From positions 1 to 64,000 of the IMG/VR virus record IMGVR_UViG_3300036760_000522: a DNA stretch of 64,000 nucleotides; one strand, written 5' to 3'. Position numbers and translations under genes: made by a program. Under the pieces are notes generated by a model. It saw only the letters and a list, made by a program, of their open reading frames with translations, did not search any database and had not been told where the DNA came from. This document shows positions 455-63,780 of this stretch, one piece after another. Within the stretch, counting starts at the first letter, position 1, and each line of letters starts with the position of its first letter.

Positions 455-832
455 GTGACACAAGCGGCTGCCATCCGAATCGCTGCCCGATACGTGGAGT
501 CTTTCCACGTCGAAGCCATGAGCAATCTGCTCCCTCGACGGACGGGGGTGCGGGGAGCTGTCATTTGGGTTTCTCCGGGTGAGTTCAGTGGCGTTGACGT
601 CCAACACGGTCCGAGGATCAAAGTCATGTTGGGTGAGAAGACCACGACAGAGGGCCTTCACGCGGCAGTATCTGTGACTCTCACAAATCCGCCGCGAGTC
701 CTAGGAGTCTTGCCAGGTAGAGTTCGAGGACAAGTTTTCGCATTCATCAACAAGAACCTAGACGTGCTCTTACGCCACTGGCGAGGTGAGCTGGATCCTG
801 GAGACGTTCTCGAACTCATCGAACGCGTCTGA
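455..832 (+). CDS. hypothetical protein, weakly DUF4160-like
   Basis: SNL..RRTG...IWVS...HGPRIKV and G.LP...FI..N..VLL.HW pattern; N-terminal RIAARY motif. Confidence 0.5.
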   Translation: MTQAAAIRIAARYVESFHVEAMSNLLPRRTGVRGAVIWVSPGEFSGVDVQHGPRIKVMLGEKTTTEGLHAAVSVTLTNPPRVLGVLPGRVRGQVFAFINKNLDVLLRHWRGELDPGDVLELIERV

Positions 833-1523: not shown

Positions 1524-1735
1524 CTTGGGGCGACCTCAAGGAAAAATTCGACACGCTACCACTGTCGACGAAGATCGTTGCCCAAGTCTGGATAGACGAC
1601 ATTGACGACGACAATTGGGACGGCTCGTTTGACGGGGCTTTCTACGACGAAACTGAGGAGACGCTCTACTTGGTGAAGCACGAAGAAGAGGCCGACGTGG
1701 TCGACGAACCAAACACTACCGGTAGCCGAGTTTGA
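1520..1735 (+). CDS. hypothetical acidic protein
   Basis: ORF coupled to upstream gene; stop lies inside the repeated 30-bp motif. Confidence 0.55.
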   Translation: MTWGDLKEKFDTLPLSTKIVAQVWIDDIDDDNWDGSFDGAFYDETEETLYLVKHEEEADVVDEPNTTGSRV

Positions 1736-1756
1736 ATCCGTCAGATGTTGAGAGGT
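1727..1756 (+). repeat. dispersed 30-bp element, copy 1
   Basis: CGAGTTTGAATCCGTCAGATGTTGAGAGGT; 29/30 identical to 11346-11375; 25-nt core again at 11420-11444. Confidence 0.9.
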
Positions 1757-1761
1757 AAGGT

Positions 1762-2409
1762 ATGACGCATCGGTTCTCATCAGGGGTGCCGTCGCTCGAC
1801 CGACGCTTGGGGGGCGGTTACCTGCCAGGAGTGGTCGAAGTCTACGGCTCACGAGGTAGTGGCAAGACAACCCTCGCGAGGCGGGCCCTAGCGGCAGCAG
1901 AGAAGGCCGGAGCCTCGGTTTCTTACTGGACTCCAGGGGTAACCAAAAAGCCTCCCAAAGGGCTCCTAGTCGAACATCACACGGAGCGGGACGTTGAGGA
2001 AGTTCTCAAGGGGATCCTGGAAGTGCTCAAACAACGAAAGCGGACGCTTGTCGTTCTCGATCCGCTTTCAAATTTGGTCTCCTTGGACACGGATCTCGTA
2101 TCAGGTGTCCGTCTGTTCGTGATCCACGCGCTCCCAAGACTCTGTCGAGCACTAGTTCGAACACAAAGCGTCTTGATCGTCACCTCGCCAGACAACCAGC
2201 GACACAGGGCGCTTCACTTCTACGCGACAACCTGTTTGCGCATCAGAGAGGACGCATCCCGAAAGTCCAGGAGCATCACAGTTACCAAGCATGTCGAAAT
2301 CGAGTGTGGTGCAGGGAGTGTTAATCGCCAGGCAAGCGTGCGTCGTCGACAAGCTTACGGCCGATCCCTTGAAGGATTCAGGGTCGGCTTCGGGCCAAGC
2401 TCAAAATGA
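1762..2409 (+). CDS. RecA/RadA-family P-loop ATPase (short, divergent)
   Basis: SSGVPSLDRRLGGG, EVYGSRGSGKTT (Walker A), LVVLD (Walker B); C-terminus short relative to RecA. Confidence 0.7.
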   Translation: MTHRFSSGVPSLDRRLGGGYLPGVVEVYGSRGSGKTTLARRALAAAEKAGASVSYWTPGVTKKPPKGLLVEHHTERDVEEVLKGILEVLKQRKRTLVVLDPLSNLVSLDTDLVSGVRLFVIHALPRLCRALVRTQSVLIVTSPDNQRHRALHFYATTCLRIREDASRKSRSITVTKHVEIECGAGSVNRQASVRRRQAYGRSLEGFRVGFGPSSK

Positions 2410-2427
2410 ACCTTTGGGAAGAAGCGT

Positions 2428-2622
2428 GTGTCAAACGAAGTCAAGATCGACGTCTCGTTCGAAGCACACCAAGTGAGCTACGCGATCCAGTTAGCTGTCT
2501 CCGACATCAGGGATGAGATGTCGCGTCCAAGCGTGCTCTTCCGGCCGACACTGACGAAGGACGGAGACAAGTATTGTATGCACTGCGGCCTTTGTGTCGG
2601 GTTCGAGGGCGCAGGGCTGTGA
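2428..2622 (+). CDS. hypothetical protein
   Basis: 64-aa ORF between RecA-like gene and cas5. Confidence 0.5.
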   Translation: MSNEVKIDVSFEAHQVSYAIQLAVSDIRDEMSRPSVLFRPTLTKDGDKYCMHCGLCVGFEGAGL

Positions 2623-2659
2623 TTTCACAAATCACGAAACCGGCACAAAACATGCTGTC

Positions 2660-2706
2660 AAAAATAATTGGTTGACACCGTTTGGTCTCGGGTTCATTGG
2701 AGCCCT
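2660..2706 (+). promoter_or_regulatory. putative cas-operon promoter carrying a PAM-flanked self-target site
   Basis: AT-rich AAAAATAATTG followed by perfect TTGACA (2672-2677); -10 not clearly recognisable; TTC (2693-2695) + ATTGGAGCCCT (2696-2706) is identical to the first 11 nt of the spacer at 9358 and overlaps the GGAG RBS of the GTG at 2707. Confidence 0.6.
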
Positions 2707-3333
2707 GTGAAAAAACTGCGATATTCGAAAGCCTGGGAAATACGTGTCAGCGGAAATCACGCTCTTTATACCCGGGCGGATTTTCAAGCGGAGCGTGTCA
2801 GTTACGATACCCCTACGCCACCGGCTATGGCCGGGATGCTTGAATCGATCCTGTGGCGTCCAGGTTTCAACTGGCGTGTCAGTGAGATTCTCGTCCTGAA
2901 CCCAATTCAGTGGACCAACCTCACTCGAAACGAGGTCAAAGAGATCACGTTTAGTAAGGGCTACGTCGATCTGGATCAGCAACACACACAACGACGATCC
3001 AGAATCCTCGTCAACGTTGATTGGATCGTGAAAGCCAAACTCGTAACAAGCACGGAAACACCTATACCAGAACTCCGAAAAATGGAGGCAATGGCCGAAC
3101 GGTATTTGGCTAACGGGAAATGCAACCACAGACCGTTCTTGGGTTGTAGAGAGTTTCCAGCAAAGGTCCGTCTAGTGAATGGGTCCGAGACTCTACCAAG
3201 TCCGGTCGACATCACGCGGCAGTTGGGCAGGATGCCACACAGCTACCGTTGGGTTCAGGACGTTCGAGCTGAGGTTTTCATGTTCGATGCCGAACTGAAT
3301 CGTGGTCGGCTCGTCGTTCCGGAGGTCGCATGA
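2707..3333 (+). CDS. cas5: type I-C Cas5 (Cas5c/Cas5d)
   Basis: ALYTR...ERVSYDTPTP.A..G.LESILWRP...VLNPI...RNEV and PFLGCREF signatures; GTG start at 2707 preferred (ORF track starts at TTG 2668). Confidence 0.92.
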   Translation: MKKLRYSKAWEIRVSGNHALYTRADFQAERVSYDTPTPPAMAGMLESILWRPGFNWRVSEILVLNPIQWTNLTRNEVKEITFSKGYVDLDQQHTQRRSRILVNVDWIVKAKLVTSTETPIPELRKMEAMAERYLANGKCNHRPFLGCREFPAKVRLVNGSETLPSPVDITRQLGRMPHSYRWVQDVRAEVFMFDAELNRGRLVVPEVA

Positions 3334-5024
3334 TCCTGGAAGCCCTTTGGGCCTACGCCCAAAAAGCACGTCTTGTTCCCAACGAGTACATGGCGCAAAC
3401 GGCGGGCCTCACTGTCGACCTAAACAAGCAAGGGGCCTTTCGAAGCGTCACCGCCAATAGGTTTTCAGTCGACGCCCCAACCCCCGTTCCTGCCAAACGG
3501 CCGGGTACGACACCTAAGCCATATCTGTTGGACCACGTTGGTTACGTGCTTGGATTGGGGACCGATCCGAACAAGCTAGCCCGGCGCAAAACACAACAGC
3601 GAGCCTACAAGGCATACGTTACTGACCTAGCAGAAACCGTCAAAAGTCTGCGACCGGTTGCCAAATTCTTGTCGGGACCTGTACCCAAGGAAATCAAGCA
3701 GCTGAAATGTGCGGATCACATCAAGGTGGCCTTCACCGTCAACGGCAAGTCGATCTACAAAGATTCAGGACTCAGAGCGCACTATCGCAGTCTGCGCAAG
3801 GAGACATCCCCTACGGAGACTTGTCGAATCACCGGCAAGCCTTGCACGCCAGGTTTTTTTCCACTCTTCAAAAACCTTCCAGGATCCAAAGGTTCAAACC
3901 TGATTACCTTCGAGGAGAAGGCGTGGCAATTTGACGGACGAGACTCTAGCAGGTGCTACCCGCTCTTGCGCGAGATTCGTGAGGGTGTTGCAGCTGCCTG
4001 GAACCATCTCACCGAACCAGCAGAAAAGGCGTTTTGGAATCGACGTTCAGCGTTCGTCCTTGAACGATCCAAAGGTACAGAAAAAGACGACAAGTCGAAG
4101 CCTTTGGCGATTTGGTGGACGTTAGCAGATGTTGATCTTAGTCCACTGCAACGCGTTGTGGAAGGACCTGTTTCCGGCAAGCCCTATCGGGAATTTATGG
4201 ATCAGGCTTTCCTCGATCTCTCAGCACTAGAGGTTGAGGGGGACCTATTTGTCTTGGTGGCACAATCGTACGACTCGTGTCCCGGACGTATTTCCGTTCT
4301 GGATTGGTTGGTCGTGCCCCTGAGAAAAGTCGCAAGCAACCTACGACAATTTCGAACTGAAACGGGCAATGCGACGCTGCGACGATTGTGTCGAAGCTCT
4401 CCGAGTTACCTAGTAAGTCAGGCCCTCTTGCGAGCCGCCTTGGTGGGAGAGGATTACCCGCCAGGTGTCATCCGAGAGCTGACTCGTCTAAACAACCAAC
4501 GTTGGCCGGATACTAACGGGCTAGCACCAGGACCTCTACTCACCGGCGTCACAGCCAAACTAATTGGAAAAGGAAATCACATGAACAACGGAAAAGATCT
4601 GGAAGAAGAAAGAGACAACCCATTCCACACGACGGACCCAAATTTTTGGGGCGGCTGTTTGGTAGCTCTGGGTAACCACCTACTGGCTGCTAATGGTGTT
4701 GGTGGGAACTTGGACGCACAACTTGACTCGATCAGCACTCAGCCAGGAAAATACTTTCCGAAGTTCGACGGCAAGGTCCGACGCGCGATCACACGACTCC
4801 GCAAGGCTCCGGTTGAGGAAAAACCCGAGATCCATACGGCCATCTCACACTACGACAGCTCGTACGTCAAGTTCGTACAGGACAGCAGCAAAGGCATCGT
4901 ACCACTGCGTTTGAGCGGCACAGAGTCTCTCGCTTTTCGACGTGGGTATGTCTTGCAGCAGCGAAGCCTAAGAGTCAACAAGGCCAAAACAGCGGAGAAA
5001 CCAGAGAAATTATCAGGGACATAA
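3330..5024 (+). CDS. cas8c: Cas8c (Csd1)-like large subunit, divergent
   Basis: MILEALWAY N-terminus, CRITG motif followed by LITF.E.AW, C-terminal AFRRGY..QQ; lies between cas5 and cas7. Confidence 0.8.
   Translation: MILEALWAYAQKARLVPNEYMAQTAGLTVDLNKQGAFRSVTANRFSVDAPTPVPAKRPGTTPKPYLLDHVGYVLGLGTDPNKLARRKTQQRAYKAYVTDLAETVKSLRPVAKFLSGPVPKEIKQLKCADHIKVAFTVNGKSIYKDSGLRAHYRSLRKETSPTETCRITGKPCTPGFFPLFKNLPGSKGSNLITFEEKAWQFDGRDSSRCYPLLREIREGVAAAWNHLTEPAEKAFWNRRSAFVLERSKGTEKDDKSKPLAIWWTLADVDLSPLQRVVEGPVSGKPYREFMDQAFLDLSALEVEGDLFVLVAQSYDSCPGRISVLDWLVVPLRKVASNLRQFRTETGNATLRRLCRSSPSYLVSQALLRAALVGEDYPPGVIRELTRLNNQRWPDTNGLAPGPLLTGVTAKLIGKGNHMNNGKDLEEERDNPFHTTDPNFWGGCLVALGNHLLAANGVGGNLDAQLDSISTQPGKYFPKFDGKVRRAITRLRKAPVEEKPEIHTAISHYDSSYVKFVQDSSKGIVPLRLSGTESLAFRRGYVLQQRSLRVNKAKTAEKPEKLSGT
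4581..5024 (+). CDS. cas11: putative Cas11 small subunit from an internal in-frame start in cas8c
   Basis: AAGGAAATCAC-ATG at codon 418 of cas8c; 147-aa product resembles the helical Cas8c C-terminal/Cas11c region. Confidence 0.6.
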   Translation: MNNGKDLEEERDNPFHTTDPNFWGGCLVALGNHLLAANGVGGNLDAQLDSISTQPGKYFPKFDGKVRRAITRLRKAPVEEKPEIHTAISHYDSSYVKFVQDSSKGIVPLRLSGTESLAFRRGYVLQQRSLRVNKAKTAEKPEKLSGT

Positions 5025-5069
5025 ATCGTCCTTGTCGGTAAAACAAAACCAACACGAATGGAAAATCAA

Positions 5070-5945
5070 ATGGCGACAGCTAAGAAAACAACACAGGTAC
5101 CCGCATTGGACGGGATCATCGTTCCAGAAACCGTCAACGCAAATCAAAACGGGGATCCAGATGACGGGGGCAATCCTCGTCGCAACGCCGTGACAGACAA
5201 AGGGCTCTGGTCACGTGAAAGCATCAATCGACGGATCCGGGATTACGTCTACGACGTTCACAAAGGTAAACCCGGGTTCGATTTGTTCATCAAACGAGGC
5301 AATGTCCACGAGACACTGATCCGGGAAGCGTACGTGAGTTCCGGAGCAGGAATCGACAAGGGCAGAGACTACGCTAAGGGCAACCTTGCGTTGTGTGAAA
5401 AGTATTTCGACGTGCGGTGGTTCGGACTTGTAGTCACCAAACCTGGTGACGGTGGGATCCGAGGGCCAATTTGCATAAATATTGGTGAATCTGTCTACCC
5501 TATAACGCACGAAGACATGGCGGGTACGAGACAAACTCGGACGAACGAAGAACGTGCCAAAACTGGCAGTCGGGAAATGTCCCACAAGCGGTTCATTCCG
5601 CACGCGGTTTTCACGATTACCTGGCACCTCGATCCGTTTTACGCACAACGAACCGGGTTCGACAAGAACGACTTGGAAATCTTCCTAGACGCGATTACAC
5701 GTGTCTTCAGGAACGATCACTCGTCTATGAGGGGGCGAATCAACCTCCGGTACTCGGTCGTGTTTGAGCACGAGGAGCCTACCCGCAATGCCGAGCCGTG
5801 TGATTTGTTCGAGCTCCTCAAAATCAAGGCAAAGGATCCGCATACGGCTTCGCAATGGTCGGACTACACCGTGACCTTACCGACGGCCAAAGATCTGCCC
5901 GCCGGTGTAACGATGAAAATCCTGCACGCAACGAAGGCTGCTTGA
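5070..5945 (+). CDS. cas7: type I-C Cas7 (Csd2)
   Basis: NANQNGDPDDGGNPR, R.IRDY, YFDVRWFG, GIRGPI.I motifs; alternative start at 5058. Confidence 0.92.
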   Translation: MATAKKTTQVPALDGIIVPETVNANQNGDPDDGGNPRRNAVTDKGLWSRESINRRIRDYVYDVHKGKPGFDLFIKRGNVHETLIREAYVSSGAGIDKGRDYAKGNLALCEKYFDVRWFGLVVTKPGDGGIRGPICINIGESVYPITHEDMAGTRQTRTNEERAKTGSREMSHKRFIPHAVFTITWHLDPFYAQRTGFDKNDLEIFLDAITRVFRNDHSSMRGRINLRYSVVFEHEEPTRNAEPCDLFELLKIKAKDPHTASQWSDYTVTLPTAKDLPAGVTMKILHATKAA

Positions 5946-5953
5946 ACCGCCCT

Positions 5954-5990
5954 TAGAGGACGAGTGCTGAACTTCAGCACTCGTCCTCTA
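5954..5990 (+). terminator. perfect 18-bp inverted repeat between cas7 and helicase (terminator/attenuator or mRNA-stabilising hairpin)
   Basis: TAGAGGACGAGTGCTGAA-C-TTCAGCACTCGTCCTCTA followed by TTTCTGATT. Confidence 0.6.
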
Positions 5991-6011
5991 TTTCTGATTG
6001 GAGTACGAATC

Positions 6012-8345
6012 ATGGAATTTCACGATTACCAAGCTGTTACCTTGGCCGACGCCTGTAACACAGATTGGAAATCTTACTACGTTTTGTGGGCAATGGCAGC
6101 CGGGAAAACGGCGTTTTGCCACGCTTACCTCAAGTGGGCTTTCGAGTGTGACGTCTATGACCACGCAGTAATCCTAACGCCCTACAAAACCACAAGGGAC
6201 GGATTCGTCACCCGTAAACTGGATGATGAGCGCCGCATCTTGTACGTCAGCGATCTGAAATACGACGTGAGAAAGGACCTGGTACGCCCGCTAGAATCGG
6301 ACTCAATCGCAGAGCTTCGTGAATACCTGCGCACACCAAAGCCTGGCTACGCTGTGGTAATTTGTGACGCCACAGCAAGAGCCTTCGTCCAAACGGGGGC
6401 TGACCAGAACGAACGCCTCATAGTAATTGGCGACGAGTGTCATGGCCATCAAGCCCCCGCGATGAGATCATGGGTAAACGCAATTCGAAGCCGCGGAGCA
6501 AAAACCATCAGTCTAACCGCAACACCCTATCGTCACGACAACGTCCCTGTATTGCCTCCACCAGGCACTAAGGGGGTTCGGTTGGGCCCAGTCCGCACGT
6601 ACACCGAGCAGGTACGGGACGGCCTGGCGCCCGACATCACGTTGAAGTGTATTCCTGTGGCCTGTGCAAACGCTATCAATGACGACGAACGCTTTCAGGA
6701 GATGGCTGCGGCAATCGTGGCTAATTGGTCACCAGATCGCAAAGCCATGGTTCAAATTACACCACGGGCTGCTGGTTGGAGCGGGCGCGAGGAGGACGAA
6801 CTGAACGAAGTCCAGAAAACTTTCTGCAACCAATTTCGATGTCGCATCATTGAAGCTCTCCAAAAGGCCAAGATCAGGTGCGTCGACATGACCGACTTTG
6901 AGGAGCACGACGGCTGTCCGCAGAACTATCAAGAGGTGTTACTCGCGGAACGTAAGGTCAGACATTTCAAGGACTCAAAGGTGGACGTCTTTATTGGGAT
7001 CAACAACATATCCCTAGGTGTTGATTGGACATTGTGTAACACAGTAATATCTACAGATTTTATGAGTTCCTTGTCTCGGATGGTTCAATTCAGTGGTCGA
7101 GGAGGTCGAAACAAAAAGGATTTCCTGTCATATCCGAATAGGTATCTAGACCAGATGGAGTTTTTGGTCTTGACACCTGTCAAGCGCGAAAACGAGGATG
7201 CTGTACGAATCCGGGAGATGGCTCGTCACGCCGTACTGCTGTCACTGACACTCTCTCAGTTGACACTTCCAGCAGGTTTGACAGGTTACACCGCCATCCA
7301 ACGGAGATTGCGTGAGATCCATGCCCCAAAGATTGCCACGGAGCTGCGAGACCACCTTGGAAGACGCGATCACTTGACTAAAGTCCACGCGAATACCGTC
7401 GTTGTCCTCTCTGATCAGTGGGGGCGAATCAAGGTAAAGAACCTCAGAGTATTACTCCTTCGACAACAACGGCAGCAGTATCCAGACGAGACCCCGGAGC
7501 AGAGACAACATGCTGTCGACGCGGCCATACAAGAGCTAGTGTCAGCTCAAGTGGATCCCGGACAGATCGAGAAAGCAGTAGCTTCTATCCCACTACAAGA
7601 AGGGACAACTCTCCGATACGTATTCGAGGAGTTGGTCAAGTGGTTCAACGACGAGTATATTGACGTTCGAATCAATCCGTTTCTCCGCAATGCAAGAGAA
7701 TTTGTTACTGAGTTCTACCCGGATACTTGCGACAATGTATTTCGCCGCCTCCGAGAGCTGCAACAAGAGGCTCTGGATCCGACAATCGTATGTGACTGGG
7801 CAATTGCCTTTTACAAAGAGCACGACAGATGGCCCGAGGCAGGCCCCATTCAGGAAGCACCGCACGTCTCCTGGGGGGATGTCAATCAAGCTCTCCTCCA
7901 CGGGACACGAGGGTTACCGCGGCTCCCCAACGGACTGTTGCAATTCCTCGGTGAATGGGCCCACAACCACAAACAGGTCCTCAGGGTGTTCTCGAGAGTC
8001 TTCCACGATATCCACCAGGACAACTCCACGGAGACGGAGTGGCGGCCTGTACTGAGCGCCCTAGGCATTCCAGGAACAGACAATATCCACGAAGCCTTTT
8101 TGCAATACGATCGTGCGCGATTGTCCTCCAGAGTCTACTTTGGTGAGCGGGAGCAAGCCGGATTCGAAGCAGCCATGTCCCACGTGGTGAAACACATTCA
8201 GCTGTTCCATTTCTTGCGGCTCTTCACGAAGGCTTTCTACAGTCGCCAGGGCTCGCATTGGAACTTCTGGTGGACAATTGCAGAAGCCCAGCGCCACGAC
8301 ACAGCTTTGACTATCAGACAACTCCGAAACCTTGCGAGCGGTTAG
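6012..8345 (+). CDS. Cas-associated SF2 (DExH) helicase lacking an HD nuclease domain
   Basis: Motif I AMAAGKT near residue 27, II DECH, III TAT, VI QFSGRGGR; no room for an N-terminal HD domain and no HD motif recognised; GGAG RBS before ATG 6012. Confidence 0.85.
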   Translation: MEFHDYQAVTLADACNTDWKSYYVLWAMAAGKTAFCHAYLKWAFECDVYDHAVILTPYKTTRDGFVTRKLDDERRILYVSDLKYDVRKDLVRPLESDSIAELREYLRTPKPGYAVVICDATARAFVQTGADQNERLIVIGDECHGHQAPAMRSWVNAIRSRGAKTISLTATPYRHDNVPVLPPPGTKGVRLGPVRTYTEQVRDGLAPDITLKCIPVACANAINDDERFQEMAAAIVANWSPDRKAMVQITPRAAGWSGREEDELNEVQKTFCNQFRCRIIEALQKAKIRCVDMTDFEEHDGCPQNYQEVLLAERKVRHFKDSKVDVFIGINNISLGVDWTLCNTVISTDFMSSLSRMVQFSGRGGRNKKDFLSYPNRYLDQMEFLVLTPVKRENEDAVRIREMARHAVLLSLTLSQLTLPAGLTGYTAIQRRLREIHAPKIATELRDHLGRRDHLTKVHANTVVVLSDQWGRIKVKNLRVLLLRQQRQQYPDETPEQRQHAVDAAIQELVSAQVDPGQIEKAVASIPLQEGTTLRYVFEELVKWFNDEYIDVRINPFLRNAREFVTEFYPDTCDNVFRRLRELQQEALDPTIVCDWAIAFYKEHDRWPEAGPIQEAPHVSWGDVNQALLHGTRGLPRLPNGLLQFLGEWAHNHKQVLRVFSRVFHDIHQDNSTETEWRPVLSALGIPGTDNIHEAFLQYDRARLSSRVYFGEREQAGFEAAMSHVVKHIQLFHFLRLFTKAFYSRQGSHWNFWWTIAEAQRHDTALTIRQLRNLASG

Positions 8346-8524
8346 GTGCTGCGACTAGGTCCTTAACCGCTCGCAAGGCGGCTTTGTTCTTTGAAAACTC
8401 ACGACATTTTCACTTCCGTTCACCTGTAGATGGTGAACGGAAGGACGCCATTCTGTTCTCTGCAAGACAACCTCTCGCAATCCACACTGCAAAACCTCGA
8501 TAAAACAGTCTTTAGTGACGAAGG
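8346..8524 (+). promoter_or_regulatory. CRISPR leader
   Basis: Non-coding, relatively AT-rich segment between helicase stop and the first conserved repeat. Confidence 0.65.
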
Positions 8525-9283
8525 GTCGAGACAGGGACCAAGGTCCCTGATGATTTCAACGACATCACCAGCGGCATGCTGCTCGCTGCCCCGGAGTCGA
8601 GACAGGGACCAAGGTCCCTGATGATTTCAACCAACGGACCGATCAAGACCTCTGGTAACGCCATCAGGTCGAGACAGGGACCAAGGTCCCTGATGATTTC
8701 AACGACCATGTTCGGAGAGGACGATGACGCTGTTCGCGGTCGAGACAGGGACCAAGGTCCCTGATGATTTCAACAACCCAGCCGGCGACGGTGGCGGCCC
8801 CGCCATGAACTGGTCGAGACAGGGACCAAGGTCCCTGATGATTTCAACACAATAACGCGGAGCAGATGAATGTCACAATTAGTTGGTCGAGACAGGGACC
8901 AAGGTCCCTGATGATTTCAACTCTGAGTTGAGTCCGCATATGTAGTCACCTACTTCGTGTCGAGACAGGGACCAAAGTCCCTGATGATTTCAACATGGAG
9001 GTCCTATGTTCGTTGATAACAATTGCACCGGGTCGAGACAGGGACCAAGGTCCCTGATGATTTCAACTCAGCGTGGCGACCAAGGAACGGACCTTACAGG
9101 TTGTCGAGACAGGGACCAAGGTCCCTGATGATTTCAACACTGGACGACCCCGCCGGCGCGCGACTCCACCATCAGTCGAGACAGGGACCAAGGTCCCTGA
9201 TGATTTCAACATGCCTGATCGCGTGCACGACTCCTCAGTAGGGGGATGTCGAGACAGGGACCAAGGTCCCTGATGATTTCAAC
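8525..9283 (+). CRISPR. CRISPR array, conserved block: 11 repeats GTCGAGACAGGGACCAAGGTCCCTGATGATTTCAAC (36 nt), spacers 35-38 nt
   Basis: Repeats start at 8525, 8596, 8668, 8739, 8813, 8886, 8959 (one substitution), 9032, 9103, 9175, 9248; stem CAGGGACC/GGTCCCTG followed by 11-nt ATGATTTCAAC. Confidence 0.98.
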
Positions 9284-9346
9284 GCGGCGAGCCGGCCCGG
9301 CGTCACGCGCCACAAGATCGATCAAAAACAGAGGCCTAAGCCTCTG

Positions 9347-9409
9347 ATGATTTCAATATTGGAGCCCTAACCCACGCGATATACGAGATTCCATTGTCCA
9401 GCAAGCAGG
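9347..9409 (+). ncRNA. candidate cas-regulating crRNA 1 (handle + spacer after first variant repeat)
   Basis: Spacer nt 1-11 (9358-9368, ATTGGAGCCCT) identical to 2696-2706 next to a TTC PAM. Confidence 0.65.
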
Positions 9410-10088
9410 GATGTGACAGGAGCCTTGGCTCCTGATGATTTCAACCCAGAGGCCCCTGGCGGTTTGGATGGACCCGAACTGACATGTGACAGGAGCCTTG
9501 GCTCCTGGTGATTCCAACAAGACAGGTGCTTAGGCACCTGATGATTTCAACGGAGTGCGCGTCGTTGCACAGCAGACCGAGGTGCTCGGATCGAAACAGG
9601 GACTCAGTCCCTGATGATTTCAACTTGTCCACCGGTGCATCCCAATGCACCGGTGCCGGAGCTTCAGCTCCTGTTTTTGACTCGTCAAGAACAGCGTTGA
9701 AGCACCTGATGGTTTCAATTCTTGTACCGATCCTGGCTTCACTAGAACGACAGCAGGACGTGACAGGAGCCTTGGCTCCTGGTGATTCCAACATGAGCGC
9801 CGCCTCGATGCGATCCTCAACGCCTTCAAAACGACAGGAGCTTCAAGGCTCCTGATGATTTCAACACACTGCACAGCGAGTCCTCGACAGCATTGGCATC
9901 GCCTCAAGACAGGGGCTACAAGACTCCTGATGATTTCAACACTCAACAACAGGTGGCAGAACGAGGCCTCTCGTATACAGGTGCTTAGGCACCTGATGAT
10001 TTCAACCAAAGCGCCCGGTCCATCGGGATGCACTGCGCCTTCAACTGGAACGGTGATTGTGTATGAAGCAAGAGCAAAAAAGCCCCTG

Positions 10089-10134
10089 GGGATTTCAATA
10101 TTGGTGCCCTATCGTGTTTGGTATGAAAAGTCTA
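10089..10134 (+). ncRNA. candidate cas-regulating crRNA 2
   Basis: Spacer from 10100 (ATTGGTGCCCTAT) matches 2696-2708 except at positions 6 and 12. Confidence 0.55.
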
Positions 10135-10985
10135 GTCAGTAACAGGGGTTCAACCCCTGATGATTTCAACTCGTATCGATGGTATGTCGAACTTGAGCGG
10201 GCAAAATCAGGAGCTTAAGCTCCTGATGATTTCAACAAAGGCAAAGTCGATCGAGAGACTACTGTGCCAAAATCAGGGGATCAATCCCCTGATGATTTCA
10301 ACATCGACAAGCAGGGATTCACCGGAGCGTTGCTGGTTGTCGGTCCAGGGGCTAGGTCCCCTGATGATTTCAACGCGCAGACCATCGACGGCGTAATCGA
10401 AGAGCTCTCGGTCAGAGACAGGAGCTTCGGCTCCTTGGTGATTACAACAAATGCACACCGGCCGGTCTTGTCGGCGCCCCGTCAGTAGCAGGGGTTCAAC
10501 TCCCCTGATGATTTCAACCAGCCCGAAGCTCTAGAGGACGAACTCGCGGCGATGACAGGAAACAGGGACCTTGGTCCCTGATGATTTTAACGTTGAGAAA
10601 CCAGGGCTGTTCCTTCAGCTTGGCCTGTCGAAACAGGGACTCAGGTCCCTGATGATTTCAACATCAAAAGCTCAAAGGCTTGACGGACTTCGTGGGGATC
10701 GAAACAGGGACTCAGGTCCCTGATGATTTCAACCTCTACGGGATATCGGCCATCCGAGATCGCCAAAAAACAGGAGCTGAAGCTCCTGATGATTTCAACT
10801 ACCAATCGTGTTCGTCGAGAGCCCCCAAGATCGAAGACAGTCAGGGGCTTAGGCTCCTGATGATTTCAATAGCACAGTGGACGGGCGCGACGCTGTTGGT
10901 GTACTATCTGGTCATCGGTATCTTGTCGAGATATTGTGCCTTTCGGCTGTGGCCAGATAGCTGACTTGGAGGAGGCCCCACGAAA

Positions 10986-11354
10986 ATGAACGAAGAAATC
11001 GATGCGATGTACTTACAGCACTGCCCTCATTGTGCGGGGGTGCATGTCGAACCCGTCCAACTTCCTGAGCCGCAAACGGCACGAAGACTTGCGTGCGGGA
11101 ATTGTCACTTCACGGCGGAAGAGGAACAATTTCGGGAGTACCAAAAGGCACGAATAAGGGAGTCCGAGCTACTGGCGCATTGCCGGGAGCAGTACGAGAC
11201 GTTGGTTCTTTTCGACAGAGTCGTCGATGTTGAGCCCTTACCTGCTGAGTGGTGTGAGGTGATCGACACATACCATCGCAAATGTGTCGCAGCTCGAGAG
11301 GAAGCTTTCTTCAGTAGCTTCGACAGTGCGATGTCGGTCCAGAATCGAGTTTGA
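10986..11354 (+). CDS. zinc-ribbon hypothetical protein
   Basis: CPHC...CGNC; GGAGG upstream; stop inside the repeated element. Confidence 0.65.
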   Translation: MNEEIDAMYLQHCPHCAGVHVEPVQLPEPQTARRLACGNCHFTAEEEQFREYQKARIRESELLAHCREQYETLVLFDRVVDVEPLPAEWCEVIDTYHRKCVAAREEAFFSSFDSAMSVQNRV

Positions 11355-11375
11355 ACCCGTCAGATGTTGAGAGGT
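11346..11375 (+). repeat. dispersed 30-bp element, copy 2
   Basis: 29/30 identical to 1727-1756. Confidence 0.9.
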
Positions 11376-11419
11376 GTGAGTCACGACCGGAGGCCGCCTT
11401 GTTCGCTCGGGGTAGTTGT

Positions 11420-11450
11420 GTTTGAACCCGTCAGATGTTGAGAGAATAAT
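11420..11450 (+). promoter_or_regulatory. dispersed element copy 3; sigma70-like promoter upstream of RHH gene
   Basis: TTGAAC-17 nt-AATAAT (11422-11450). Confidence 0.55.
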
Positions 11451-11493
11451 CGCGCTCATGGTAACATTAGCGTTGCTTGCCCCCTAAACTACG

Positions 11494-11730
11494 ATGGCTA
11501 CGAAGTCTGTGACACTGCAAGTGAGACTCGACGCTCAATCTGTTGAGTTGCTCGACAGGGTCCGCCACGTCATGCGCCAGCGTGTAGGAGGGGCTGAGGT
11601 ACCAGAGTTCCCAAGATCCAGGGTCCACAGGCTGGCGCTGCTGAGAGGGTTGCAAAGCTTGTGTGACGAGTTCGGGATCAAAGCGGAGCGAAAGCAAAAA
11701 ATTGCTGGTGCCTTTCCTCGAAAAATCTGA
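11494..11730 (+). CDS. ribbon-helix-helix (CopG-like) regulator
   Basis: N-terminal beta pattern TLQVRLD, helix, then SRVHRLALLRGL. Confidence 0.6.
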   Translation: MATKSVTLQVRLDAQSVELLDRVRHVMRQRVGGAEVPEFPRSRVHRLALLRGLQSLCDEFGIKAERKQKIAGAFPRKI

Positions 11731-11755
11731 GAACCTGTAGAGGGAGACAACAACC

Positions 11756-11911
11756 ATGAAATTCGCCCGCAGAAAATTAGTGCTTGGATTGCCGGCCTGG
11801 TTCGCAGTGAAGGCCCAACTTCCTGAGGAGACAGAGCTTGAGGATCCGCTAGACAACAAGGGTCAGTTGACCAAGGAAGACTTGCGACTGTTGGTTGAGG
11901 CCGGGTTGTGA
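11756..11911 (+). CDS. small hypothetical protein (51 aa)
   Basis: GGGAG RBS; MKFARRKLVLG... Confidence 0.45.
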   Translation: MKFARRKLVLGLPAWFAVKAQLPEETELEDPLDNKGQLTKEDLRLLVEAGL

Positions 11912-12081
11912 CAAAGGTTGCTCGCAGTACTCCTTGCGCCTCTTGGTTGTGTCCCAACGGGTGACTTGAAGGAGGCCCAAGCACTCGTTACTACTTCATC
12001 ATCAATACCAAGCGGCCGAACCGGAAAGTGTCGGGACCTTTCCCGCTCAAAACGGCTAAGCAGTAAGGTTGGCACCGAAGT

Positions 12082-12477
12082 ATGATGCAGCCTAAGTTGT
12101 GGCCCGTCTCGTTCGATATTCCGTCAGGTGGCGAAACGTCTAGCCATCATTCGGGGAACCCTACGGGAGCCAAGCAGGATTTGAGGGCACAACCTCCTGT
12201 AGCGGTGGACGGGACACAACAAAGACTCGCGCCAGTACAGGGCGAGGACCGCAACGAGGACGGTTCAGCGCCTTCTCCTCGACCACGCGACGGTTGGGTT
12301 GTGAAGCCGGGTCGCATCTCGTGGTCCGAGCACCTGGAGGCATTTGAGGCGTATGCTGAGCAACATGGTCGAGAGCAAGGACCTGAGCGCATGGCTGAAC
12401 GTGGCGGATTCAGTTACTACGAGTTGCTAATGTTTCTTGGACATCAGCCCAAGACGTGGGAGCCTCGCAAGGGCTAA
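12082..12477 (+). CDS. hypothetical phage protein
   Basis: ORF; C-terminal ISW.EH.EA..AY...G..Q..ER.AERGGF resembles phage hypotheticals. Confidence 0.6.
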   Translation: MMQPKLWPVSFDIPSGGETSSHHSGNPTGAKQDLRAQPPVAVDGTQQRLAPVQGEDRNEDGSAPSPRPRDGWVVKPGRISWSEHLEAFEAYAEQHGREQGPERMAERGGFSYYELLMFLGHQPKTWEPRKG

Positions 12478-12514
12478 ACCTCCTCCTGCCAATTCAAGAC
12501 CTCGGAGAGAAGCT

Positions 12515-12757
12515 GTGACAAGGTGGCGAGTTTACGACTATCCGGCGTCCAAACAGGTGATTGTCAAGGAGGGCTTCAGCTGGCCGTGTTTCCTTTTCTG
12601 GCCAATCTGGGCATTGCTTGCACGGGTTTGGGTCGTCTTCAACCTGTGGGTGTTGTACGCAATGTTAAAGCCAGTATGGCTCGCGGTAAAAAACCGAAGC
12701 GTTCAAAGGTCTGTCGGAAAAGTTTTTGAACCACTTGGTGTCGCCAGCAGACCATGA
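12515..12757 (+). CDS. DUF2628-like membrane protein
   Basis: VKEGFSWPCFLFWPIWALL motif; GTG start with GGAG RBS. Confidence 0.55.
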   Translation: MTRWRVYDYPASKQVIVKEGFSWPCFLFWPIWALLARVWVVFNLWVLYAMLKPVWLAVKNRSVQRSVGKVFEPLGVASRP

Positions 12758-12960
12758 GTACGTTGAACCCTCTGGTCTCTCCAACGGTGGCAGTATGCTA
12801 GGAGGTCTTATGTTGTGGTGTCTTTTCGGAGTCCTCCTCATCGTAGTAGTCGTGGCGGCCTTCTTGTAGTCACGTAGTCGTGGTTTTTCAAAAATTTGAC
12901 CGGGGCGAAATTTGAGAATCCGTACTATTTGTATCCCTTTCGTTTTCTGTTCGCGTATTG

Positions 12961-12980
12961 GATGTGCAAATTTGCACATC
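12961..12980. promoter_or_regulatory. perfect 20-bp palindrome in AT-rich intergenic region
   Basis: GATGTGCAAA|TTTGCACATC. Confidence 0.6.
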
Positions 12981-13067
12981 TTCATCAACCGCTAAGGATA
13001 ATCAAGCGGTTCTGGACCCACTCGAATTAGCGGCGGTGTTTGCGGAGCAGGCTTTGAAAGGTATTCA

Positions 13068-13514
13068 ATGGAACAAATGACAACTGACGACATCAGAACC
13101 AAGGTCGTGGCTTCACTCGAGCTAATCGGGATCAAGTACAGCAAGGTCACGGTTTTGGATCTAGGCCTCCAGTGGGTCGTGGATTGTTTTGAGCAATTGA
13201 GCATACACCTCGAACACGACACACACTTGATTCAAGGAGTTATGATCCAAGCACCAAGAACGTTGCTGCTTCTTGGCGCCAACGGCTACTGGTATGTATT
13301 CGTGGAACGACATTCTCCTGAGGAAGCCCAACCTCATGAGACCTTTGCTGACGGATTTTACTGCGTCTCCGACAGTGAGGAAGGCGGGACACCTGATTGC
13401 CTCATGAGCGGTATTGTGGAAGTCGTGCGTGAGTTGGCCGAGCGTCGTCTTCCAACCACAGGAACGGACGGGCTGCGAACAGGACAGGGGAACGTGCCTG
13501 TGTTCAAGAGATAG
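13068..13514 (+). CDS. hypothetical protein
   Basis: 148-aa ORF at head of a coupled gene run. Confidence 0.6.
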   Translation: MEQMTTDDIRTKVVASLELIGIKYSKVTVLDLGLQWVVDCFEQLSIHLEHDTHLIQGVMIQAPRTLLLLGANGYWYVFVERHSPEEAQPHETFADGFYCVSDSEEGGTPDCLMSGIVEVVRELAERRLPTTGTDGLRTGQGNVPVFKR

Positions 13515-63219: not shown

Positions 63220-63780
63220 ATGTCGGACGGAGGAATCACTGTTTCGAAGACAACGACGGGGGCCTTTCTAATACAAGATATCCGTGTTTATGTCGAACAC
63301 GGCAAGGCGACTTTTATACCGGCTGACAAGGTTGTGTCGTCACGGGACCTGCACCGGGCTCTCTCAGACAAACAGCTCTTTCACTTGACGAGCAGCATGT
63401 TGCAACAACAGGCACAAGATCCTCGAGTAGCTGATCTGACTCGTACAAATGAGGATCTGCGACGTCAACTCGCCGAGCAGCAAGGCCAATGGCAACGGTC
63501 TGTAGAATCGTTGGAGAAGAAATTGGACAACGTCTTGGTAGCGGTGTCTCAACAACCGAAGGTCATTACCGTTCAGGCACCTGCGGCTGAGACAGCAGTA
63601 AAGATCGATTGGGAATTGAAGGAAGGAGCTAACGATATCGTGGACGAGACTGGAACATACGTTCCGAATATCCGGGCCAAAGCGGACAGTGTGAATGTGA
63701 CTGTGACCCCCAAGACCGAAGAAGTCTCTATTGAAGAGACTGCCAAACGCTTGCGACACACTCGCCGCAAACCCTTATGA
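63220..63780 (+). CDS. hypothetical coiled-coil protein
   Basis: ATG at 63220 two nt after upstream stop. Confidence 0.6.
   Translation: MSDGGITVSKTTTGAFLIQDIRVYVEHGKATFIPADKVVSSRDLHRALSDKQLFHLTSSMLQQQAQDPRVADLTRTNEDLRRQLAEQQGQWQRSVESLEKKLDNVLVAVSQQPKVITVQAPAAETAVKIDWELKEGANDIVDETGTYVPNIRAKADSVNVTVTPKTEEVSIEETAKRLRHTRRKPL

What the first reader, a model, noticed from the sequence alone, without database searches (positions are those of the whole stretch)
1727..11450. 30-bp element brackets the whole cas cassette and is doubled upstream of an RHH regulator
Seen: copies at 1727-1756 and 11346-11375 (29/30 identical) flank the RecA-like gene, cas genes and array as direct repeats about 9.6 kb apart. 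A third 25-nt copy (11420) forms TTGAAC-N17-AATAAT before the RHH gene at 11494. Copies 1 and 2 each supply the TGA stop of the upstream ORF. Inference: either a promoter/operator through which the RHH protein co-regulates itself and the recA-cas region, or a recombination scar from cassette acquisition.
Basis: partly seen in the sequence, partly recalled or inferred. Interest (0 to 1): 0.6.

Follow-up and report, generated by a model that had tools for sequence, protein, structure and literature searches.

The report
Orphan CRISPR repeats in huge phage
The 30-base element is not a promoter or operator: it is the conserved half of a CRISPR repeat from a second, Cas12f-type system that a sister phage still carries at this spot, and this phage keeps only a two-repeat stub and scattered single repeats after replacing that system with its present type I-C one.

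Summary
The three copies are real and at the stated places. The window is the start of a 301.5-kb phage genome with terminal repeats, and the same core (CGTCAGATGTTGAGAG) occurs at five more places in it.

A sister phage (85-97% identical) shows what the element is. At the homologous locus it has a Cas12f/TnpB-like gene, an upstream anti-repeat complementary to the element's core (a candidate tracrRNA), and an array of 31 repeats of about 36 nt.

Copies 2 and 3 plus the 34 nt between them are 99% identical to units 28-29 of that array, so they are an orphan mini-array. Copy 1 is a solitary repeat inserted next to the RecA-like gene. It is not the edge of the cas cassette: homology with the sister runs on to about 2567.

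This phage has no Cas12f gene and no tracrRNA. The type I-C variant cassette (about 2568-11344) replaced the type V one and truncated ORFs on both sides. TTGAAC-N17-AATAAT is a junction between a repeat and the remnant of a small ORF.

Whether the orphan repeats still act is untested. They could serve as decoy or guide RNAs against Cas12f-bearing relatives. All lie in the sense orientation to local genes.

The parts
1721..1754 (+).
   Evidence: Repeat-profile nhmmer E=2.4e-10. 35/35 identical to repeat 7 of the sister's array. Absent at this site in the sister, where the insertion point is flanked by GGTA. Its TGA ends ORF 1520-1735, and the RecA-like gene's own RBS (GGTAAGG) follows it.
1762..2409 (+). 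RecA/KaiC-like ATPase gene, conserved in the sister phage; not part of the swapped cassette
   Evidence: Pfam RecA/KaiC P-loop hits. Lies in the 95% identical block 810-2567 shared with the sister.
2428..2622 (+). Truncated homolog of the sister's 155-aa gene; the left breakpoint of the cassette replacement lies at about 2568-2600
   Evidence: Alignment with L039:9159-9626 holds for about the first 47 codons and then is lost.
2668..8345 (+). Type I-C variant cas genes: cas5d (2668-3333), cas8c/csd1 (3330-5024), cas7 (5058-5945), helicase in place of Cas3 (5964-8345); no cas1, cas2 or cas4
   Evidence: Pfam hits. The helicase has no HD-domain hit and no PDB relative. Matches the huge-phage type I-C variant described in PMC7162821.
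8524..10870 (+). Type I-C CRISPR array of 33 repeats (11 near-identical, then 22 divergent ones with covarying stems)
10986..11354 (+). ORF of 122 aa (weak Zn-ribbon hits) whose last codons and stop lie in the first type V repeat; uncertain whether it is a real gene
   Evidence: Fell below the score cut-off of my crude coding-potential gene finder.
11337..11373 (+).
   Evidence: nhmmer E=1.1e-9. Region 11345-11445 is 99% identical to L038:4858-4958.
11374..11407 (+). Single 34-nt spacer, the same as spacer 28 of the sister's array
   Evidence: No protospacer found in either phage or in IMG/VR.
11408..11444 (+).
   Evidence: nhmmer E=6.6e-10. Homology with the sister's RHH region resumes exactly at 11445.
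11445..11487 (+). 3' remnant of a 49-aa hydrophobic ORF that is intact in the sister; supplies the 'AATAAT' hexamer
   Evidence: Direct comparison of G000:11445-11487 with L038:9953-9995.
11494..11730 (+).
   Evidence: No Pfam, NCBIfam or PDB hit. AF2 model pLDDT 54 with a strand-helix-helix pattern. ESM Atlas feature hit to a CopG-like cluster at 0.92. One homolog at 85% identity in the sister, inside an operon.

Best explanation
The element is the conserved 3' part of a roughly 36-nt CRISPR repeat from a miniature type V (Cas12f/TnpB-like, tracrRNA-dependent) system. That part is the segment that pairs with the tracrRNA and abuts the spacer. Shown: a sister phage carries the whole system at the homologous locus, in the order RecA-like gene, 155-aa gene, anti-repeat, Cas12f-like gene, 208-aa gene, 31-repeat array, nine genes, RHH-like gene. 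Inferred: in the lineage of this phage a type I-C variant cassette with its own array replaced the effector, the tracrRNA and most of the array, and a further deletion joined repeat 29 to the middle of a small ORF upstream of the RHH-like gene. What remains in the window is a two-repeat, one-spacer mini-array (copies 2 and 3) and one solitary repeat (copy 1). Copy 1 was inserted, flanked by 4-nt microhomology, between a small ORF and the RecA-like gene. Five more solitary repeats lie elsewhere in the genome. The genome has no Cas12f gene and no anti-repeat, so these repeats cannot work in cis. I take them to be recent remnants and ectopic copies of a lost array. They are transcribed passively within mRNAs, and they now supply stop codons for the upstream ORFs. 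Any remaining activity would have to be in trans, on the Cas12f-tracrRNA of a co-infecting relative. The confidence given is for the identity (CRISPR repeats of a displaced type V system); the 'mostly inert remnant' part is less sure, perhaps 0.55.
For: The array of 31 units in the sister has the element as the 3' 25 nt of each repeat. The first five units are regular, with a 72-74-nt period. G000:11345-11445 is 99% identical to L038:4858-4958, and G000:1720-1754 is 100% identical to L038:3496-3530. A repeat profile finds exactly the known copies in this genome, with E-values from 2e-10 to 0.08, plus one weak partial match at 278581-278602 (E=0.03). The adjacent 537-aa protein matches AsCas12f (PDB 8j12, E=2e-10), NCBIfam guided_TnpB (E=1e-19), and Pfam Cas12f1-like_TNB and OrfB_IS605. 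A 14-nt exact complement of the core lies 40-55 nt upstream of that gene on the same strand. G000 has no Cas12f/TnpB homolog and no tracr region. Both breakpoints fall inside ORFs that are intact in the sister. Copy 1 is absent from the sister's otherwise 95% identical site. The same phage and the sister-type array occur together in sediment run X3, and the sister type occurs in X4.
Against: No expression or processing data exist; no RNA run holds the region. The sister genome is known only as two metagenome fragments, and treating them as one phage is an inference. Type V-F membership of the effector rests on sequence similarity below the curated cut-offs, and its RuvC-I aspartate aligns with an asparagine. 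The mini-array is better conserved (99%) than the adjacent shared DNA (87%). In the older solitary copies the 3' 17 nt are intact while the 5' half has decayed to chance level. All solitary copies are in sense orientation to local genes. Together these hint at constraint or function rather than pure decay. The direction of change (type V ancestral, I-C derived) is inferred from the truncated ORFs, not from an outgroup.
Confidence: 0.85

Rival explanations
1. The orphan repeats are functional RNA decoys or reprogramming guides (Racr- or Cracr-like). Transcribed within phage mRNAs, they pair with the tracrRNA of a Cas12f-bearing relative that co-infects the same host (or of an unknown host system). 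They then sequester or misdirect its effector and protect this phage from interviral CRISPR targeting.
For: Solitary repeats and mini-arrays in viruses have been shown to inhibit or reprogram Cas effectors, including type V-A (PMC10651486; bioRxiv 10.1101/2024.10.29.618823). The invariant part of the element is exactly the anti-repeat-pairing segment. There are eight copies, all in sense orientation. Both phage types are found in the same sediment run. The mini-array is 99% conserved against 87% for the DNA next to it.
Against: The sister's spacers found no match in this genome, so there is no sign that it is targeted. The sequences after the solitary repeats do not match the sister's cas12f promoter, tracr or gene, as a Cracr would require. 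No promoter is evident directly upstream of most copies. No bacterial or archaeal species genome carries this repeat. The two phages diverged so recently that neutral survival is not excluded.
Confidence: 0.2
2. Solitary repeats are self-made guide genes. A repeat placed directly upstream of a stretch of the phage's own DNA turns that stretch into a crRNA guide. The phage's own copy is safe because the repeat occupies the PAM position. Related phages that lack the insertion are cut or bound at that allele, giving interviral exclusion or homing-like spread of the insertion.
For: A type V repeat followed by any sequence is a complete crRNA gene. Lineage-specific solitary repeats abut sequence conserved in the other phage: G001:68822 versus G000 near 207031, with 2 mismatches in the first 22 nt, and copy 1. 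The one solitary type I-C repeat occurs only in the phage that has the I-C system. It abuts sequence that the sister conserves, preceded there by CTC. At G001:68822 the repeat replaces a block of equal length between near-identical flanks.
Against: Any insertion into conserved DNA would have this property. The PAMs of both systems are unknown. This phage keeps type V solitary repeats without an effector. A type I-C crRNA normally needs a downstream repeat hairpin, and none follows the solitary repeat. Solitary-repeat changes are only 2 of about 65 indels or rearrangements between the two genomes in 145 kb.
Confidence: 0.08
3. The element is a promoter or operator through which the RHH-like protein regulates itself and the recA-cas region.
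For: TTGAAC-N17-AATAAT scores 9/12 at copy 3, 44 nt upstream of the ORF. Two copies lie in tandem upstream of the ORF. The ORF has a strand-helix-helix pattern and a weak CopG-like Atlas hit.
Against: The element is a unit of a 31-copy array next to a Cas12f-like gene in the sister. In the sister the RHH-like gene has no element upstream and sits inside an operon. The -10 hexamer derives from a truncated ORF. Copies 1 and 2 have no -10. Two copies lie between convergent genes. The element has no internal symmetry.
Confidence: 0.04
4. Copies 1 and 2 are attachment-like direct repeats left by site-specific insertion of the recA-cas cassette, or are sites that can delete it by recombination.
For: They are direct repeats 9.6 kb apart with 29/30 identity. 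Contig depth in run X1 is 45 on the cas side against 84 to the right of the array, which could mean that some genomes lack the cassette.
Against: The segment that differs from the sister starts at about 2568, not at copy 1, and the RecA-like gene is shared. No joint between the copies was seen in the laid stretch, but that stretch did not include copy 1. No integrase lies nearby. The same element occurs at five other loci.
Confidence: 0.05

Closest known systems
Solitary repeat units (SRUs) and RNA anti-CRISPRs (Racrs) of phages and plasmids (Camara-Wilpert et al. 2023, PMC10651486)
   Same: Single CRISPR repeats, not next to a cognate cas gene, lying mostly between genes in a viral genome.
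   Different: Known SRUs mimic the host's repeats and usually follow their own promoter. Here the repeats match a system encoded by a sister phage, and no GTDB species genome carries them. There are eight per genome, they sit at cistron junctions or inside ORFs, and inhibition is untested.
Virus-borne mini-CRISPR arrays (Medvedeva et al. 2019, PMC6858448) and viral crRNA-like RNAs, 'Cracr' (bioRxiv 10.1101/2024.10.29.618823)
   Same: A virus carries one or two repeats with one spacer and no effector gene of that type.
   Different: Those arrays use host Cas proteins, and their spacers hit related viruses or host cas promoters. Here the spacer has no known target, and the mini-array is demonstrably a leftover of a long array.
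CRISPR-Cas loci of huge phages: the type I-C variant with a helicase instead of Cas3, and Cas14/type V-F including a 'dCas14' (Al-Shayeb et al. 2020, PMC7162821)
   Same: Both systems seen here are of these kinds: no cas1/2/4, a helicase without an HD domain, and a miniature type V effector with a possibly inactive RuvC.
   Different: What is new here is that two sister phages carry the two different systems at the same locus, and that repeats of the lost system persist.

Membership tests
CRISPR repeat / orphan mini-array | Two or more direct repeats of 23-47 nt separated by a unique spacer of similar length | tested here: met
   Repeats at 11337-11373 and 11408-11444 with a 34-nt spacer.
CRISPR repeat / orphan mini-array | The repeat matches that of a bona fide array next to a cas effector gene | tested here: met
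   31-unit array next to a Cas12f-like gene in the sister phage. The repeat-spacer-repeat unit is 99% identical.
CRISPR repeat / orphan mini-array | Cognate effector and tracrRNA in the same genome | tested here: not met
   No tblastn, NF040570 or PF07282 match in the 301.5-kb DTR-bounded record, and no anti-repeat. Hence 'orphan'.
CRISPR repeat / orphan mini-array | Transcribed and processed into crRNA | not testable with these tools
   No RNA run holds the region.
SRU / Racr | A full or partial repeat with no other repeat within 100 bp, outside cas loci | tested here: met
   Copy 1 and the copies at 66.7, 123.4, 136.1, 293.4 and 301.2 kb.
SRU / Racr | Matches the CRISPR repeat of the host's system | tested here: inconclusive
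   The host is unknown. No exact match to the degenerate 23-nt pattern in 185,579 species genomes. No Rfam CRISPR-DR hit.
SRU / Racr | Expressed as a small RNA from its own promoter and inhibits the Cas effector | not testable with these tools
   Only copy 3 overlaps a sigma-70-like match.
Type V-F (Cas12f) system, in the sister phage | Miniature effector with a C-terminal RuvC split by a zinc-ribbon (TNB) domain | tested here: met
   537 aa. AsCas12f E=2e-10 over residues 240-439, guided_TnpB E=1e-19, and Pfam TNB and OrfB_IS605 hits below their cut-offs.
Type V-F (Cas12f) system, in the sister phage | Intact RuvC catalytic triad | tested here: inconclusive
   Asn aligns with the RuvC-I Asp of AsCas12f and the RuvC-II Glu is kept. 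RuvC-III lies outside the alignment.
Type V-F (Cas12f) system, in the sister phage | tracrRNA with an anti-repeat | tested here: met
   14-nt exact complement of the repeat core in the 375-nt gap upstream of the gene, on the same strand. Expression not tested.
Sigma-70 promoter with RHH operator | Conserved -35 and -10 hexamers at 16-18 nt, shared by the copies, with a gene downstream | tested here: not met
   Only copy 3 qualifies. The conserved bases are in the spacer. Two genomic copies lie between convergent genes.
Sigma-70 promoter with RHH operator | The regulator is a ribbon-helix-helix protein | tested here: inconclusive
   No family or PDB hit, a low-confidence model and a weak Atlas lead.
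att-type direct repeats of an inserted cassette | The repeats coincide with both ends of the segment absent from relatives, and relatives have one copy at the empty site | tested here: not met
   The left end of the differing segment is at about 2568, some 810 nt right of copy 1. The relative has a 31-repeat array.

The most novel reading that the evidence does not exclude
Solitary CRISPR repeats are made and kept on purpose in these huge phages. Planting a repeat (type V-F in one lineage, type I-C in the other) directly upstream of a piece of the phage's own genome creates a guide against the same locus in competing relatives that lack the insertion, while the repeat masks the PAM at home. 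This would be a CRISPR-based interviral exclusion or homing device that needs no spacer-acquisition genes.
Probability: 0.08. Interest if true: 0.9.

Novelty: new variant of a known kind. Interest (0 to 1): 0.62.

Why it matters
The finding replaces a supposed regulatory site with a concrete piece of CRISPR natural history. Two nearly identical huge phages carry different CRISPR-Cas types (a type I-C variant and a Cas12f-like type V) at the same locus, and the loser's repeats survive as a mini-array and as single units spread over the genome.

This gives a dated example of whole-system replacement in phages that lack adaptation genes. It also shows that solitary repeats can derive from a phage's own former system rather than from mimicry of the host.

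If the orphan repeats are still active against Cas12f-bearing relatives, they would be RNA-level weapons in phage-phage conflict. For annotation, it is a warning that conserved 25-30-nt 'promoter-like' motifs near phage cas genes may be CRISPR repeats of another system.

Tried and rejected
1. Coding readings of the element. Translations from the TTG and ATG inside it give long ORFs at only a few copies and stops at the others. Rejected.

2. A crRNA target. No spacer of the window's I-C array shares more than 8 nt with the element.

3. A sigma-70 promoter. Only copy 3 scores.

4. Scans for the core in IMG/VR and JGI metagenomes gave one true relative (G001). The rest were chance hits. One of these, L019, is an unrelated low-complexity contig, perhaps eukaryotic. 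I compared it once by BLAST to the two phage genomes, found nothing, and did not pursue it further.

5. Relatives at 42-51% protein identity lack the motif.

6. Close relatives of Cas7, the RecA-like protein and the Cas12f-like protein in IMG/VR: none found.

7. Spacer targets. One 25/36 match of a sister spacer to G000:275.2 kb has a mismatched PAM-proximal half, so I rejected it. The retained spacer has no exact 20-nt match in IMG/VR.

8. A Cracr-like match of the post-repeat sequences to the sister's cas12f locus: none.

9. Rfam: no family hit on either array or on the tracr region.

10. The RHH fold. The single-sequence AF2 model was too poor for a fold search.

11. Whether solitary repeats drive rearrangement in general. 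They account for only 2 of about 65 differences over 145 kb.

12. The laid-contig test for cassette deletion could not span both copies within the 6-kb limit. No joint was seen in 7300-13200.

Full report
**The observation.** They share the 25-nt GTTTGAAYCCGTCAGATGTTGAGAG, and 100 shuffles of the window gave no match. Intervals 1727-1756 and 11346-11375 differ at one base. The TGA in copies 1 and 2 ends ORFs 1520-1735 and 10986-11354. TTGAAC-N17-AATAAT is present at 11422-11450. Between the copies lie:
- a RecA/KaiC-like ATPase gene (1762-2409);
- a type I-C variant cas set, namely Cas5d, Csd1/Cas8c, Cas7 and a 793-aa helicase with no HD-domain hit, without cas1/2/4;
- an array of 33 repeats at 8524-10870.

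**Wider setting.** The window is the first 64 kb of a 301,550-bp IMG/VR virus record (G000) with 127-nt direct terminal repeats, so this is a huge phage. The element is not peculiar to the cas locus. The core CGTCAGATGTTGAGAG, or a one-mismatch variant, also occurs at 66,686 (+), 123,378 (-), 136,091 (-), 293,429 (-) and 301,168 (+). It is the most repeated 14-mer family in the genome outside the I-C array. This already argues against a pair of att-like sites.

**Readings that failed.** Reading the element as coding gave inconsistent ORFs. No spacer of the I-C array matches it. As a sigma-70 promoter, only copy 3 has a -10-like hexamer, and the bases conserved among copies fall in what would be the promoter's spacer. 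At copy 1 a start site would lie inside the RecA-like gene, whose N-terminus is needed for the P-loop domain match.

**Relatives.** An exact-core scan of IMG/VR found one true relative, G001. It is a 159-kb fragment whose proteins are 85-99% identical to those of G000:108-275 kb. It does not cover the cas region, but it shows that the element comes and goes between close relatives:
- The 123.4-kb copy is shared and identical.
- The 136.1-kb copy sits in a 121-nt G000-only insert at the breakpoint of a 1.27-kb inversion.
- G001 has a copy at 68,822 where G000 (near 207,031) has an unrelated block of equal length between near-identical flanks.

More distant relatives (42-51% protein identity) lack the motif.

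**The decisive locus.** Contigs of four sediment runs laid on 7300-13200 showed a roughly 88% identical relative. Its homology to the RHH-like region stops exactly at 11445, the 3' edge of copy 3, and it has another copy 4.9 kb upstream. The same laying also turned up further copies in other contexts. The one homolog of the 78-aa ORF (85% identity) led to a 68-kb JGI contig from the same sample as G001 (loci L038 and L039). I call this contig the sister. That it and G001 are one phage is an inference.

The sister is collinear with G000 from 297.6 kb across the genome end to 2567, at 84-95% identity. Its gene order there is: the same small ORFs, the same RecA-like gene, a 155-aa gene, a 375-nt gap, a 537-aa gene, a 208-aa gene, 31 direct repeats of about 36 nt at L038:3069-5066, nine genes, a 49-aa hydrophobic ORF, and the RHH-like gene. 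The first five array units are regular, with 35-37-nt spacers. Later units have variable 5' halves and often shortened spacers.

**Evidence that this is a type V CRISPR system.**
- The 537-aa protein matches AsCas12f (PDB 8j12, E=2e-10, residues 240-439).
- It matches NCBIfam guided_TnpB (E=1e-19) and, weakly, Pfam Cas12f1-like_TNB and OrfB_IS605.
- A 14-nt exact complement of the element's core lies 40-55 nt upstream of the gene on the same strand. This anti-repeat makes the gap a candidate tracrRNA gene.

So the invariant part of the element is the segment expected to pair with the tracrRNA, plus the four bases next to the spacer.

**What the window's copies are.** G000:11345-11445 (copy 2, 34 nt, copy 3) is 99% identical to units 28-29 of the sister's array. 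G000:1720-1754 is identical to its repeat 7, including a rare 5' variant. A profile built from the 31 repeats finds in G000 the known copies and, apart from one weak partial match at 278581-278602 (E=0.03), nothing else below E=0.1. It also shows their full extent: 1721-1754, 11343-11373 and 11410-11444.

Copies 2 and 3 are therefore an orphan mini-array. Copy 1 is a solitary repeat. At copy 1's site the sister has no repeat. There the upstream ORF ends in an ATGA overlap with the RecA-like start, and the G000 insertion is flanked by GGTA.

G000 has no Cas12f/TnpB-like gene and nothing like the tracr region.

**The cassette replacement.** Homology with the sister ends at about 2567, inside G000's 64-aa ORF 2428-2622. 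That ORF shares only its first 47 or so codons with the sister's 155-aa gene. Homology resumes at 11345. After repeat 29 it jumps to the middle of the 49-aa ORF, whose last 13 codons survive at 11445-11487. The 'AATAAT' hexamer is part of that remnant, so the promoter-like site is a by-product of the junction.

Both flanking ORFs are truncated in G000 and intact in the sister. From this I infer that the type V arrangement is older and that the I-C cassette (about 2568-11344) replaced it. The RecA-like gene and copy 1 lie outside the replaced segment, so the element does not bracket the cassette in any mechanistic sense.

**Function.** This part is inference. Without effector or tracrRNA the repeats cannot act in cis. 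The simplest view is that they are recent remnants and ectopic copies that are tolerated. The phages are so similar that neutral survival is plausible, and solitary-repeat changes are only 2 of about 65 indels or rearrangements in 145 kb.

Three observations keep a function open:
- In the older solitary copies the 5' half has decayed to chance level while the 3' 17 nt are intact.
- The mini-array is 99% conserved, against 87% for the DNA beside it.
- All eleven type V repeat loci in the two phages, and the one solitary I-C repeat, are in the sense orientation to local genes.

Solitary repeats and mini-arrays of viruses are known to inhibit or reprogram Cas effectors (PMC10651486; bioRxiv 10.1101/2024.10.29.618823; PMC6858448). 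A role as decoys against Cas12f-bearing relatives, which occur in the same sediment run, is the main rival. Against it, the sister's spacers found no match in G000, the post-repeat sequences do not match the sister's cas12f locus, and no prokaryotic species genome carries the repeat.

A bolder reading is that solitary repeats turn adjacent self sequence into guides against repeat-less alleles of competitors. It fits several details, listed under the rival explanations and the novel case, but any insertion into conserved DNA would fit them too.

**Comparison with what is known.** Both systems are of kinds already reported in huge phages: a type I-C variant with a helicase instead of Cas3, and Cas14/type V-F including a catalytically impaired 'dCas14' (PMC7162821). 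In the sister's effector an Asn aligns with the RuvC-I Asp of AsCas12f. Solitary repeats and mini-arrays in viruses are also known. The new points here are:
- two different CRISPR-Cas types at one locus in sister phages;
- repeats of the lost system persisting;
- several solitary repeats per genome, matching a phage system rather than a host system;
- these repeats being gained and lost between close relatives with short flanking direct repeats of 4, 5 and 11 nt.

**Verdict.** The promoter/operator interpretation is not supported. The 'scar' alternative is partly right, for copies 2 and 3 only. The feature is a new variant of a known kind.

**Limits.** There are no expression data. The sister genome is incomplete. 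The RHH assignment is unconfirmed.

Noticed in passing
window 8524-10870: The I-C array has 11 near-identical leader-side repeats followed by 22 repeats that all differ in stem sequence. They keep the hairpin through compensatory changes (4 of 8 pairs, in 6-8 sequences each) and keep the 3' handle CTGATGATTTCAAC. With no cas1/cas2, the array may have grown by capturing units from other arrays.
   Followed up: partly
G000:298020-298054 (-), about 3.4 kb before the window start on the circular map: A solitary type I-C repeat (profile E=3e-8) forms a 45-nt in-frame insertion inside gene 297522-298085 relative to the sister phage. It is flanked by a CTACG direct repeat. No such repeat occurs in the sister, which lacks the I-C system.
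   Followed up: partly
L039:10001-11614 (sister phage): The Cas12f-like effector has Asn where AsCas12f has the RuvC-I catalytic Asp (CNFG against IDLG), while the RuvC-II Glu is kept. It may be a nuclease-dead, binding-only effector.
   Followed up: partly
window 5964-8345: The 'Cas3' position holds a 793-aa helicase (Helicase_C and ResIII hits only). It has no HD nuclease hit and no relative among solved structures, as in the huge-phage type I-C variant.
   Followed up: partly
window 63598-63621 (-); also G000 124923, 164243, 268656, 275628, 278210, 295594: A second dispersed 24-nt motif family (CTTCAATTCCCAATCGATCTGATC-like), mostly between genes. Two related copies are G000-only insertions relative to G001. 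Function unknown.
   Followed up: no
G000:134817-136210: A 1.27-kb gene-sized segment is inverted relative to G001, with 4-nt overlaps at both junctions. G000 has an extra 121 nt carrying a type V solitary repeat at one breakpoint.
   Followed up: partly
G000:66632-66721: The solitary repeat at 66.7 kb lies in a 79-nt insert flanked by an 11-nt direct repeat (GATTAGCTAGG). The repeat end ATGTTGAGAG is duplicated in tandem.
   Followed up: no
window 455-832 (+); G000 158070-158459 (-), 292728-293111 (-): A family of about 125-aa paralogs of unknown function. The window copy is absent from the sister at that site.
   Followed up: no
window 7300-13200 in run X1: The contig covering the cas genes and upstream has mean word depth 45. 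The contig to the right of the array has 84. This may reflect population variants without the cas side, or assembly effects.
   Followed up: no
window 1762-2409 and L039:8493-9140: A 215-aa RecA/KaiC-like P-loop ATPase sits just upstream of the CRISPR-Cas locus in both phages, whichever CRISPR type follows. Its role is unknown.
   Followed up: no
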